A DNA stretch of 63,284 nucleotides, the filler included, from Octopus bimaculoides (Eukaryota): NCBI RefSeq assembly GCF_001194135.2. It is 3 parts of 2 records of this genome, joined end to end, with 100 filler letters (N's around TTAATTAATTAA, not from the genome) between each part and the next. Parts side by side here need not be neighbours in the genome. Positions count along the whole stretch, not along the records: positions 21,902 to 44,255 come from NC_069002.1; 2 more parts are not named here. One strand, written 5' to 3'. The notes beneath the pieces were generated by a model that did not search any database, was not told where the DNA came from, and saw only the letters and a list, made by a program, of their open reading frames with translations. Positions 28,544-32,092 of this stretch are shown here, one piece after another (the stretch's first letter is position 1; each line of letters opens with the position of its first letter). A program made the position numbers and the translations under genes.

Positions 28544-29640
28544 CTGTAAATCAGAAATAGAATTGGTAATTAACAGGTAGATATATTAATTAAAAGTAAC
28601 ATTATGTATTTCTATCACTAATTACATACTAATCATAGCAATAACTACAGACAAAAGACAAAACAAATTTACTAGTGGTGGTGGTGGGAGGGGGACTTTC
28701 AGCTTTACTATACGTTTGTATATTTGAATGCAAGATGGTCATTGGCTAAGTCATTAGAGAGTCAGATATATTCCGTGCTGCATGGAATTTGGTCAGTGAA
28801 CAGGTCATGGTCTCAAAGCGACGAAAATATTTTGGAAAATTAAATTTAAATGTTGAAGTGAATCTAATGGTTTTTGTGTGTTTCTTAAATGCGCTGAACA
28901 AATTGGCTTCATAATTGTTAATATTAACATCATTTAAATTCTAAATGTATTTGGATAGGGTGGTAGTAAAGCATCTTCCAAAGTACCTGAATGCATACAT
29001 ATGTTGTGAGAATCTACTCTTAAACGGATCTTTAGTAAGTCCTTTATAGCTTTTTGCATCATTGTTATTTACAACAGAGTTTTTAGTTCAATAAACTAAT
29101 GCCTTAGACAAACACATGCTACTGAGGAGGCAGATATTGAGTTGGTCACTGGTATCACATCTGGTATCATATCAAAATCCCATCTGGTATCATATTTAAT
29201 GTCATATCTGGTGTCACATCCAATACTTCAAAACCATGTCAAAACAAAAGGAACTTACTTTGTGCTGGTGTTGTTGGTGCTGGTGCTGTAGTTGTTGGAA
29301 CAGTTGTTGGAACAGTTGTTGGAACAGTTGTTGGAACAGTTGTTGGAACAGTTGTCGGAACAGTAGTTGGTGCTGGGGTTGTTGGTGGTGGTGCTGCCTT
29401 TTCAACGCAGTGAAGTACGTTGTTTATAAAACACATTTCTACCAAAAGTTCATTGTTACAGTTTGGTGCAGTTTTGGTGCATGACATATTTGGCAAGTAA
29501 CAACTGGGGCCTGAAATATAAAAAAAAATAAACATCATCATTACGGTCATCATTGTTGCTATCATCATCATCATCACTAGCACCACTAACTTCTACCACC
29601 ACCATCATCATCACCACATTACTACCATCATCACCATAAC

Positions 29641-29675
<35 letters not shown>

Positions 29676-30226
29676 CTAGCACCACTTAACTCCCACCACC
29701 ACCACCACCACCACCACCATCACCACCATAACCATCATCATCACTACTACCACCATCACCACAGTTCTAAGTTCAAATTCTGCCAANNNNNNNNNNNNNN
29801 NNNNNNNNNNNNNNNNNNNNNNNNNNNNNNNNNNNNNNNNNNNNNNNNNNNNNNNNNNNNNNNNNNNNNNNNNNNNNNNNNNNNNNNNNNNNNNNNNNNN
29901 NNNNNNNNNNNNNNNNNNNNNNNNNNCTCCTTTTTTTTCTTTTCAATTTTATTACCCTTGTTTACACGCAAAACCCTCACAACTACACACACACACACAC
30001 ACACACACATTGTTTTCTCCTGTGCTGTCCATAATGCTTTTCTTCTTGTAAACCCATGTAGTTAATAAAGAAATTTTTATTATTATTATTATTGATTGTT
30101 ATTATTATTATTCAGTAGTTTTATTTTTATAATGTGCTTTCACTTCACTACCGATCGCTGATCTGTGTGCCTTGGGTATGTGCTGTGGTTTGCTGTGATG
30201 CTCTTATGGTTACTGTATTGAAATTG

Positions 30227-30279
<53 letters not shown>

Positions 30280-32092
30280 CATCATCATCGCCATCATCAT
30301 CTTTATTAAGGCAGTGAGCTGGAAGAATTGTTAGTAGGCTGGGAAAAATCCTTAGAGGCATTTCGTCCATCTTTACATTCTGAGTTCAAATTCTGCCAAG
30401 CTTGACTTTGCCTTTCATCCTTTCAGGGTCGATAAATTAAGTACCAGTTATGCAGTGGGGTCGATGTAATCGACTTAATCCCTTTGTTTGTCCTTGTTTG
30501 TCCCCTCTATGTTGCATCAAGTAGCTTCTAGTGACAGAAGCCTGAACTACAACGGGCTTTCCTACAGACGTTTCTGGTTACACGATGGGCTTCTTTCAGT
30601 TTCTGTTTGCCAAATCCACTCACAGGGCTTTGGTCGGCCCAAGGCTACAGTAAAAGACACTTGCCCAAGGTGCCACACACATATGTATGTATGTATTTGT
30701 TATTTGTGTCTGTGTTTGTCCCCCCACCATCACTTGACAACCGATGCTGGTGAGTTTACGTCCCCGTCACTTAGCAGTTTGGCAAAAAGAGACTGATATA
30801 ATAAGTACTAGGCTTACAAAGAATAAGCCCTGGGGTCAATTTGTTTGACTAAAGGCGGTGCTCCAGCATGACCACAGTCGAATGACTGAAACAAGCAAAA
30901 GAATAGAAGAATAAAAAATTTGAAATAAAACCAAAAAGCAAGATTGATTAAACTACTTACACATTTTAGGTTCAATACACCTGAAAACCCCACTCTGGAA
31001 GCAGTAGCCCTTCACGTAGGGAGTGCAGTTTGGGGCCGATTTACTGCAGTCGAATTTGCCCGTGTAACAGTCATTACCTTGAGGAGAAAAGAAAATTTAA
31101 ACTTTAATCTTAATTACCATATCATTCTTGAAGATTAATTCGTTTTTGTATCTACAGGCAGATATGGAACACATGTACATACACACACGCACACATACAT
31201 ATACACACACATACATACATATACACATACATACATACATTCGTGCATGCATACACACACACACTCACACACACATACATACACACATACATCCGTACAC
31301 ACATACATACATACATACATGCATGCATACATACACACATACATCTGTACACACACATACATACATACATACATACATACATACATACATCCGTACACAT
31401 ACATACATTCACACACACATACACATACATACATACATACACAAATACATACATAGAATAAAGTAACTTTAATGATAAACCTTCCTCAAATAGACACTCC
31501 ATCTTCCAGAGAGATGATGGAAGATTATTAATTGAAGAATACTCTTCGATGCTNNNNNNNNNNNNNNNNNNNNNNNNNNNNNNNNNNNNNNNNNNNNNNN
31601 NNNNNNNNNNNNNNNNNNNNNNNNNNNNNNNNNNNNNNNNNNNNNNNNNNNNNNNNNNNNNNNNNNNNNNNNNNNNNNNNNNNNNNNNNNNNNNNNNNNN
31701 NNNNNNNNNNNNNNNNNNNNNNNNNNNNNNNNNNNNNNNNNNNNNNNNNNNNNNNNNNNNNNNNNNNNNNNNNNNNNNNNNNNNNNNNNNNNNNNNNNNN
31801 NNNNNNNNNNNNNNNNNNNNNNNNNNNNNNNNNNNNNNNNNNNNNNNNNNNNNNNNNNNNNNNNNNNNNNNNNNNNNNNNNNNNNNNNNNNNNNNNNNNN
31901 NNNNNNNNNNNNNNNNNNNNNNNNNNNNNNNNNNNNNNNNNNNNNNNNNNNNNNNNNNNNNNNNNNNNNNNNNNNNNNNNNNNNNNNNNNNNNNNNNNNN
32001 NNNNNNNNTTGTAGTTACTGTTACTGTTGTTGTTGCTACCACTGCTAGCGTTGATGCTGTTGTTGAAACTTTGTATCTGACCATATACTTGA

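What the first reader, a model, noticed from the sequence alone, without database searches (positions are those of the whole stretch)
29397..31077. Exon-duplicated novel 6-Cys module: C-x2-CY-x5-C-x-K-x-APNC-x7/8-CF-x3-V-x2-C-x-E
Seen: module 1 [38 protein letters not shown] and module 2 [38 protein letters not shown] share 14 identical positions, including all six Cys and KxAPNC. In both, the first Cys codon is split by a phase-1 intron (T|GT, T|GC), which is direct evidence of whole-exon duplication and independent support for the gene model. Each module carries an N-glycosylation sequon (NCT, NMS). From memory, the spacing C-x2-C-x6-C-x6-C-x7/8-C-x7-C does not match ShKT, Kazal, Kunitz, WAP, EGF, antistasin or chitin-binding type-2 patterns. 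Inference: a possibly undescribed small disulfide-rich domain.
Basis: partly seen in the sequence, partly recalled or inferred. Interest (0 to 1): 0.78.

Follow-up and report, generated by a model that had tools for sequence, protein, structure and literature searches.

The report
Undescribed cephalopod six-cysteine protein module
Two neighbouring exons of a small secreted-protein gene each encode one copy of a 38-residue six-cysteine module that matches no described domain or solved fold but recurs four times in an unnamed cuttlefish protein, so it is a real, lineage-restricted domain family of unknown function.

Summary
On the minus strand, exon 2 (31077-30961) and exon 3 (29510-29259) each encode C-x2-C-x6-C-x6-C-x7/8-C-x7-C with an invariant P-N-C. 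They share 14/37 identities (pairwise E 6e-9). In both, the first Cys codon is made by a phase-1 splice (T|GT, T|GC).

I completed the gene as four exons, 195 aa: a signal peptide (34550-34478), two modules, a (TTVP)6 Thr/Pro linker, and a different C-terminal 6-Cys domain (28543-28398). All splice sites are canonical and all junctions are phase 1.

The assembly gap (29787-29926) lies in intron 2, inside repeats, so it does not affect the reading frame. It could still hide a further module exon.

A two-module profile searched against 1.84 billion proteins gave one true hit, an unnamed Acanthosepion pharaonis protein. Its locus has four module exons with the same split Cys. Sepia esculenta whole-larva mRNA contigs encode the full 289-aa form.

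Pfam, PDB sequence searches and Foldseek (AF2 model pLDDT 87) gave no significant match. The best, non-significant, resemblance is the first half of fungal Zn2Cys6.

Function is only inferred: a secreted mucin-type binding or defence protein. Expression of the octopus-like copy is not shown.

The parts
34630..34635 (-). TATA-like hexamer 85 nt upstream of the start codon (suggestive only)
   Evidence: sequence read
34478..34550 (-). Exon 1 CDS: signal peptide [24 protein letters not shown] plus a final T (phase-1 donor T|gtaaga) that supplies the first base of module 1's first Cys codon
   Evidence: It is the only non-microsatellite candidate in the 13 kb upstream. An equivalent exon in cuttlefish (L001 1618-1705) is confirmed by mRNA.
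31078..34477 (-). Intron 1, containing assembly gaps 31554-32008 and 33308-33471 and long (TG/TA)n-type microsatellites
30961..31077 (-). Exon 2 (117 nt, phase 1-1): module 1, (C)[38 protein letters not shown]
29511..30960 (-). Intron 2, containing the assembly gap 29787-29926 flanked by a microsatellite and a dispersed repeat
29395..29510 (-). Exon 3, first part: module 2, (C)[38 protein letters not shown]
29259..29394 (-). Exon 3, second part: Thr/Pro-rich linker [13 protein letters not shown](TTVP)5[12 protein letters not shown] (72% Thr+Pro), ending in phase-1 donor A|gtaagt
   Evidence: The cuttlefish S4 exon likewise carries a module plus a T/P linker.
28398..28543 (-). Exon 4: C-terminal 6-Cys domain (K)[47 protein letters not shown] plus the stop codon. 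It is in frame with the phase-1 end of exon 3.
   Evidence: It is collinear with the cuttlefish domain ECNFSK...CSQGVCCLNK.
28373..28378 (-). AATAAA polyadenylation-type signal 20 nt after the stop codon

Best explanation
The finding lies in a four-exon gene on the minus strand. It encodes a 195-aa secreted protein: signal peptide, two copies of an about 38-residue six-cysteine module, a Thr/Pro-rich (presumably O-glycosylated) linker, and an unrelated C-terminal six-cysteine domain.

The module has the pattern C-x2-C-x6-C-x6-C-x7/8-C-x7-C, with invariant P-N-C at the fourth Cys and C-x-E at the sixth. It belongs to a domain family not described in Pfam or PDB. So far the family is seen only in coleoid cephalopods: this octopus-like window and two cuttlefish species.

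Each module is one symmetrical phase 1-1 exon, and its first Cys codon is created by splicing. Copy number therefore changes by whole-exon duplication (2 copies here, 4 in cuttlefish).

The module is predicted to fold as a short N-terminal helical turn packed on a C-terminal beta-hairpin, held together by three disulfides.

Inferred mechanism, not shown. The protein is exported. The rigid modules serve as extracellular binding units displayed on a mucin-like stalk. The most likely ligands are polysaccharide or mucus/cuticle components, by analogy with the peritrophin architecture. The C-terminal domain would add a second binding or cross-linking function.
For: Shown:
- Exon boundaries, phases and the intact 588-nt CDS with canonical ag/gtaag sites.
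- Module-to-module similarity above chance.
- One true homologue among 1.84e9 proteins, E 8e-6, with the same architecture.
- Four module exons with the same split Cys in the A. pharaonis locus.
- A full-length spliced product in 16 S. esculenta RNA-seq assemblies. The runs checked are from whole-larva libraries.
- All Cys and the PNC motif are conserved across 10 modules.
- dN/dS is about 0.4-0.5 between the two cuttlefish.
- The AF2 model has pLDDT 87, with a helix and a hairpin. The C-terminal domain, with a shallow alignment, reached only 56, so high confidence is not automatic for Cys-rich sequences.
- No Pfam, PDB or Foldseek match.

Inferred:
- Secretion, from an n/h/c-type N-terminus in both lineages, with a predicted mature N-terminal Gln.
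- O-glycosylation, from the 72% Thr+Pro linker.
- A binding role, from the architecture and the mostly aromatic positions on the hairpin.
Against: - There is no transcript or protein evidence for the copy in this window. Its spliced product and ORF variants are absent from the 15-billion-protein collection.
- Gaps in introns 1 and 2 may hide more module exons, so '2 modules' is a minimum.
- The functional claim has no direct support. The aromatic positions are only partly conserved: Y of YPNC is Ala in both window modules, and YY before Cys6 is FR or LH.
- No tissue information is available.
- The family's apparent restriction to cephalopods rests on one profile search, built from two sequences that lacked the first Cys.
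Confidence: 0.6

Rival explanations
1. The gene and module are the same, but the protein is a host-defence effector. The small cationic disulfide-rich modules, and especially the C-terminal C...C-x3/4-C-x12-14-C-x4/5-CC domain, would act as antimicrobial peptides, possibly released from the linker.
For: - The protein is secreted and the modules are small and disulfide-rich.
- The weak best structural neighbours are defensin- or toxin-like hairpin peptides (APETx2, alpha-defensin 5; TM 0.41-0.45).
- The spacing of the C-terminal domain recalls big-defensin or beta-defensin arrays (from my own knowledge; family background in PMC7203481).
- dN/dS of about 0.4-0.5 is fairly high, as is often seen in immune genes.
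- The predicted mature pI is 8.3.
Against: - The Foldseek matches are not significant (E above 4).
- phmmer of the C-terminal domains against PDB sequences returned no significant match and no defensin. That big-defensin structures are in the PDB is taken from PMC7203481.
- No dibasic processing sites flank the modules.
- The modules are not strongly cationic.
Confidence: 0.2
2. The module is a very divergent member of an established 6-Cys extracellular family (EGF-like, peritrophin/CBM14-like, TIL/antistasin-like) that sequence and Foldseek searches are too weak to recognise at 38-45 residues.
For: - It has about 40 residues, six Cys, a C-terminal beta-hairpin and phase 1-1 exons, as EGF-like modules do.
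- The architecture of tandem 6-Cys modules plus a PT-rich linker is that of peritrophins.
- There is a weak EGF_alliinase hit (E 0.03, 15 bits against a cut-off of 25).
- Foldseek is insensitive for very small models.
Against: - No Pfam family reached its threshold for any of 6 modules or 3 whole proteins.
- The spacing lacks the C-x-C of EGF and the long loops of CBM14.
- The profile built from 6 modules hit no EGF, TIL or CBM chain in the PDB, even at E 10.
Confidence: 0.15
3. The copy in this window is a non-functional relic, or an artefact of a fragmented assembly, and only the cuttlefish gene is functional.
For: - No protein or transcript from this species was found in the collections.
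- Module 1 is the most divergent of all modules. It has only 3-8 non-Cys identities to the others, a one-residue deletion and EPK in place of EK.
- The locus is riddled with repeats and seven assembly gaps.
Against: - All four exons are open.
- All six splice sites are canonical and phase-compatible.
- All 18 mature Cys are retained.
- The signal peptide, the stop codon and an AATAAA signal are in place.
- A decayed copy would not keep these over the long octopus-cuttlefish divergence.
Confidence: 0.08
4. The N-terminal half of the module is a metal-binding cluster related to the fungal Zn2Cys6 (GAL4-type) domain, so the protein binds metals rather than forming three disulfides.
For: - The best PDB profile hits are LAC9, GAL4 and HAP1 over C-x2-C-x6-C-x6-C, with matching K and P positions (E 0.24-0.55).
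- The cuttlefish transcripts come from heavy-metal, salinity and nanoplastic exposure studies, although control libraries are included.
Against: - E 0.24 is not significant.
- Pfam Zn_clus was not hit.
- The second-half spacing (x7/8, x7) does not fit C-x2-C-x6-8-C.
- A signal peptide and a mucin-like linker point to the oxidising secretory pathway.
- Zn2Cys6 is a fungal nuclear domain.
Confidence: 0.03

Closest known systems
Unnamed protein CAE1274490.1 / UniRef100_A0A812CNK3 of Acanthosepion (Sepia) pharaonis, and its Sepia esculenta transcript product (P0003, 289 aa)
   Same: It has the same module (all six Cys, PNC, C-x-E), the same phase-1 split of the first Cys codon, and the same order: signal peptide, modules, T/P linker fused to the last module exon, then the C-terminal C..C..C..C..CC domain.
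   Different: It has four modules of 132-nt exons instead of two, a shorter linker without the TTVP repeat, and one extra 29-nt terminal exon with a seventh Cys. The deposited A. pharaonis model lacks the signal peptide and two modules. It is unnamed and uncharacterised, so it provides no functional annotation.
Peritrophin-type proteins (tandem chitin-binding CBM14 / peritrophin-A domains with mucin-like Pro/Thr linkers)
   Same: It shares the architecture: secreted, tandem six-Cys modules, a Thr/Pro-rich O-glycosylation-type linker, and aromatic residues on beta-strands. This is a comparison of how it may work; the description of peritrophins is from general knowledge.
   Different: CBM14 is about 60-70 residues with much longer inter-Cys loops. 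There is no Pfam CBM_14 hit at E up to 10. Chitin binding was not tested.
EGF-like domains
   Same: They are about 40 residues with six Cys and a C-terminal beta-hairpin, are typically encoded by phase 1-1 exons, and are multiplied by exon duplication.
   Different: The spacing differs: there is no C-x-C between the fourth and fifth Cys, and there is a C-x2-C at the start. No EGF family passes in Pfam; only EGF_alliinase appears at 15 bits against a cut-off of 25. There is no EGF chain among the PDB profile hits.
Fungal Zn(II)2Cys6 binuclear cluster (GAL4, LAC9, HAP1; Pfam PF00172)
   Same: The first four Cys have the spacing C-x2-C-x6-C-x6-C, with a Lys after the third Cys and a Pro before the fourth. 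These are the top, non-significant, hits of the module profile in PDB sequences.
   Different: The second half differs (C-x7/8-C-x7-C against C-x2-C-x6-8-C). Zn2Cys6 is a nuclear DNA-binding zinc cluster of fungi, whereas this protein is a secreted animal protein. E is 0.24 and there is no Pfam hit.

Membership tests
The module family itself (working definition from 10 modules in 3 species) | Six Cys spaced C-x2-C-x6-C-x6-C-x7/8-C-x7-C, with invariant P-N before the fourth Cys and C-x-E at the sixth | tested here: met
   Alignments A3 and A5. Both window modules fit. Module 1 has x7 where all the others have x8.
The module family itself | One module per symmetrical phase 1-1 exon, with the first Cys codon split T|GY by the intron | tested here: met
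   Window exons 2 and 3. Four exons in L001. Junctions confirmed in S. esculenta mRNA.
The module family itself | Host protein has a signal peptide, a T/P linker after the last module and a C-terminal C-x15-C-x3/4-C-x12/14-C-x4/5-CC domain | tested here: met
   The signal peptide was judged by n/h/c-region inspection only; no SignalP was available.
Pfam small disulfide-rich families (EGF, Kazal, Kunitz, WAP, ShK, antistasin, TIL, CBM_14, Lustrin_cystein, defensins and others) | hmmscan score at or above the family's gathering threshold | tested here: not met
   No family reached its threshold for the modules, the 195-aa product, P0002 or P0003. The best was EGF_alliinase at 15.1 bits against 25.
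Zn2Cys6 fungal-type cluster | C-x2-C-x6-C-x5-12-C-x2-C-x6-8-C | tested here: not met
   The first three intervals fit. The fourth is 7-8 residues instead of 2. The consensus is from general knowledge and from the GAL4/LAC9 alignments printed.
Zn2Cys6 fungal-type cluster | Significant sequence match to solved members or to Pfam PF00172 | tested here: not met
   Best E is 0.24 at 14.7 bits. There is no Pfam hit.
Peritrophin-A / CBM14 | Chitin binding | not testable with these tools
   This needs a pull-down with recombinant protein.
Any solved fold (PDB) or predicted viral fold (BFVD) | Foldseek E of 0.001 or better, or TM of 0.5 or more, to a domain of similar size | tested here: not met
   Model pLDDT is 87. 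Best E is 4.1 in PDB and 3.1 in BFVD; best TMq is 0.45 in PDB (alpha-defensin 5) and 0.48 in BFVD, neither significant. Power is low at 45 residues, and the AlphaFold DB was not available.
Big defensin / beta-defensin (C-terminal domain only) | Detectable sequence similarity to solved members | tested here: not met
   phmmer of the C-terminal domain and of P0003 against PDB sequences found no defensin hit at E up to 10. The AF2 model is too poor for a fold search (pLDDT 56).

The most novel reading that the evidence does not exclude
The module is a new disulfide-stabilised fold that arose in coleoid cephalopods. It has been kept since the octopus-cuttlefish split and multiplied by phase-1 exon duplication. 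It would define a previously unrecognised class of secreted mucin-type binding or defence proteins, and its members are missing or mis-modelled in current cephalopod annotations.
Probability: 0.4. Interest if true: 0.55.

Novelty: new variant of a known kind. Interest (0 to 1): 0.45.

Why it matters
Lineage-restricted secreted proteins are thought to underlie many cephalopod novelties, such as skin, suckers, mucus and cuticles, yet almost none have a defined domain.

This work provides a clean, testable example:
- a compact module with a confident predicted structure;
- a precise sequence signature;
- a gene structure that shows how copy number evolves;
- transcript proof in cuttlefish.

It also exposes annotation errors. 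The only public relative lacks its signal peptide and half its modules, and no protein from the species of this window was found in the collections searched.

The general principle, disulfide-rich modules multiplied by phase 1-1 exon duplication, is textbook. The value therefore lies in a new family and a handle for experiments, not in a new mechanism.

Tried and rejected
- **Word-indexed homologue searches.** The octopus-like two-module peptide found nothing. The six-module alignment also found nothing. The second search did not even recover P0002, so that negative result is uninformative.
- **Bacterial hit P0001.** It scored E 5e-17 but was rejected. It consists of 13 repeats of a 12-residue stretch (DTAPSC...) in a 1339-aa repeat protein and has no module-like Cys pattern.
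- **Exact look-ups.** The spliced product and 10 ORF variants were all absent from the collection. The species of the window and expression of its copy therefore remain unverified.
- **Further modules in the window.** Regex and tblastn scans found none in the visible sequence.
- **Synteny.** tblastx of the 30.7-kb cuttlefish locus against the window conserved only the module exon. The cuttlefish neighbour, a Peptidase_C48 gene, was not found in the window.
- **C-terminal domain structure.** The model reached only pLDDT 56, MAFFT mis-registered the Cys, and no fold search was run on it.
- **Literature.** Searches by accession found nothing. Searches by topic found no description of this family.
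- **Metallothionein and a transmembrane C-terminus.** Both were considered and dropped. The protein has 15% Cys, aromatic residues and a signal peptide, which does not fit a metallothionein. The hydrophobic stretch in exon 4 aligns with a Cys-rich domain in cuttlefish, not with a membrane anchor.
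Full report
**What is in the sequence**

The piece is AT-rich animal DNA full of microsatellites, dispersed repeats and seven assembly gaps. The finding lies on the minus strand.

- Exon 2 runs 31077-30961 (117 nt). It follows a pyrimidine tract and caag, and ends ...AAA ATG T|gtaagt.
- Exon 3 runs 29510-29259 (252 nt). It follows ...tatatttcag and ends ...GCA CAA A|gtaagt.
- Exon 2 encodes (C)[38 protein letters not shown].
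- Exon 3 encodes (C)[37 protein letters not shown], followed by [14 protein letters not shown](TTVP)5[12 protein letters not shown].
- Both exons start with the last two bases of a Cys codon (GT, GC) and end with one extra base, so both are phase 1-1.

**Is it more than chance?**

- BLASTP of the two modules gives 14/37 identities, E 6e-9 for that single comparison.
- With the Cys held fixed, 8 of 32 other positions are identical, shuffle p = 1.7e-4.
- Independent support comes from another genome, described below.

**The gap**

The N-run at 29787-29926 lies inside intron 2. It is 277 nt upstream of the exon 3 acceptor and 1034 nt downstream of the exon 2 donor. Its low-coordinate flank is a (CAT/CAC)n microsatellite followed by the start of a dispersed repeat (TTCTAAGTTCAAATTCTGCCAA) that recurs at 30378. 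This is a typical repeat-induced gap.

No reading frame has to cross the gap. The exon 2 to exon 3 junction is defined by canonical splice sites of matching phase. What cannot be excluded is a further module exon hidden in this gap, or in the two gaps of intron 1.

**The whole gene**

A scan for ATG plus a hydrophobic stretch plus a phase-1 T|GT donor gave one non-microsatellite candidate in the 13 kb upstream. This is 34550-34478, encoding [24 protein letters not shown] plus T|gtaaga. It has A at -3 and G at +4, and a TATATA hexamer 85 nt upstream.
- *End.* Downstream, tttacag|AG GAA TGC... at 28543 continues the phase-1 frame of exon 3. It encodes (K)[47 protein letters not shown] and a stop at 28400-28398, with AATAAA 20 nt later.
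- *Product.* The four exons give a 588-nt CDS and a 195-aa product. The predicted mature form is 173 aa with 18 Cys and pI 8.3.

**Relatives**

Pfam, PDB sequences and the word-indexed protein search found nothing for the modules.

I then searched a profile of the two window modules against 1.84 billion representative proteins. It returned two hits:

- P0001 is a bacterial repeat protein that matches only a 12-residue stretch 13 times. I rejected it.
- P0002 (E 8e-6) is a 203-aa unnamed protein of Acanthosepion pharaonis (CAE1274490.1, UniRef100_A0A812CNK3). It has two modules, a T/P linker and a C-terminal C...C...C...C...CC domain collinear with exon 4.

The genomic locus of P0002 (L001) holds four module exons of 132 nt each. 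Every one begins ag|GT and ends T|gt. It also holds an upstream signal-peptide exon ending in T|gt.

The 90% cluster of P0002 contains P0003, a 289-aa product. It is found complete on about 940-nt contigs assembled from 16 sequencing runs. The run-accession series map to Sepia esculenta larval transcriptome studies, and one listed run, SRR20545812, is stated to be whole-larva RNA (PMC10466719, PMC9538352, PMC10571815, PMC10442824).

P0003 is exactly the protein I had reconstructed from the genome: signal peptide, four modules, linker, C-terminal domain. The splice-made Cys is therefore confirmed in mRNA. The deposited A. pharaonis model is shown to lack the signal peptide and two modules, and it has Gly where a junction Cys belongs.

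Across the 10 modules the six Cys, P-N-C and C-x-E are invariant. Cuttlefish modules 1-3 resemble each other (14-19 non-Cys identities of 33) more than module 4 or the window modules (3-13). This points to further duplication in that lineage, or to loss in this one. dN/dS between the two cuttlefish is about 0.42 in the modules and 0.49 overall. It rests on only 32 substitutions, none at Cys or PNC.

**Is it a known domain?**

- No Pfam family reaches threshold for any module or whole protein.
- A six-module profile against PDB sequences gives at best E 0.24. The hits are the fungal Zn2Cys6 clusters LAC9, GAL4 and HAP1, which share C-x2-C-x6-C-x6-C plus a Lys and a Pro. They diverge completely in the second half.
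- AlphaFold2 on one cuttlefish module with an 8-row paralogue alignment gives pLDDT 87 and pTM 0.62. It shows a helical turn at the C-x2-C and a beta-hairpin carrying Cys5 and Cys6.
- Foldseek finds nothing better than E about 3-4 in PDB or BFVD. The nearest small folds are APETx2 and alpha-defensin 5 at TM 0.41-0.45.
- The C-terminal domain also has no Pfam or PDB sequence match, and its model is unreliable (pLDDT 56).

Caveats: Foldseek is weak on 45-residue models, the AlphaFold DB was not available, and I could not read the disulfide pairs from the model.

**How it probably works**

Shown: a conserved gene encoding an N-terminal hydrophobic leader, tandem six-Cys modules, a Thr/Pro-rich linker and a second Cys-rich domain. 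It is transcribed in cuttlefish hatchlings.

Inferred: the protein is secreted, with predicted cleavage leaving an N-terminal Gln in both lineages. Each module forms three disulfides and the linker is O-glycosylated. The modules would then act as rigid extracellular binding units on a mucin-like stalk.

The nearest architectural analogy is the peritrophins (tandem six-Cys chitin-binding modules plus mucin linkers). I therefore rank polysaccharide, mucus or cuticle binding first, and a defence-peptide role second. Neither is tested. The aromatic positions that would support glycan binding are only partly conserved in the window modules.

**Verdict**

This is a real, undescribed, so far cephalopod-only module family that grows by phase-1 exon duplication.

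It is a new family within a well-known kind of thing, so interest is moderate. The weakest points are the lack of expression evidence for this window's copy, the possible hidden exons, and the purely inferential function.

Noticed in passing
window 28398-28543 (-): Exon 4 encodes a second, unrelated six-Cys domain, C-x15-C-x3/4-C-x12/14-C-x4/5-CC-L-x-K, shared with both cuttlefish proteins. It has no Pfam or PDB sequence match, and its AF2 model is poor (pLDDT 56). The spacing of its last five Cys recalls big-defensin or beta-defensin arrays, from memory only.
   Followed up: partly
window 29259-29394 (-): The linker is a 12-nt tandem repeat encoding (TTVP)x6 inside a 46-residue stretch that is 72% Thr+Pro. 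This is a mucin-type O-glycosylation region, and its copy number is likely to be polymorphic.
   Followed up: partly
L001 1618-20705 (Acanthosepion pharaonis CAHIKZ030001788.1): The deposited gene model CAE1274490.1 starts at a spurious exon (L001 10001-10102). It omits the signal-peptide exon (1618-1705) and two module exons (7722-7853, 8586-8717). The S. esculenta mRNA product P0003 shows the true 7-exon structure.
   Followed up: yes
window 43936-44255: A perfect 160-nt palindrome (arms 43936-44095 and 44096-44255, no spacer) runs to the very end of the piece. It is probably a fold-back assembly artefact at a scaffold end.
   Followed up: partly
window 29765-29786, 30378-30399, 24955-24970, 28010-28025: A dispersed SINE-like repeat (core GTTCAAATTCTGCCAA) is present, and one copy runs into the assembly gap. 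A second repeat family gives recurring ORF fragments '...[24 protein letters not shown]' at about 44100, 42700, 30900 and 23350.
   Followed up: partly
window 27509-27841 (+): This ORF has weak helix-turn-helix hits, including the Sleeping Beauty transposase HTH (E 0.002-0.03, below thresholds). It is probably a Tc1/mariner-type transposase remnant between exon 4 and the next sequence.
   Followed up: partly
window 25531-25905 (-) and 23353-23625 (-): Two ORF fragments share the motif IP.D.N...KEFD...KYKDL..E..K.W. They have no Pfam hit and are probably copies of an unclassified mobile element.
   Followed up: partly
P0003 / L002-L011: The cuttlefish mature protein has an odd number of Cys (31, with the extra one in the terminal EKCAG tail). 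The window's product has 18. A free Cys could allow intermolecular cross-linking in cuttlefish only.
   Followed up: no
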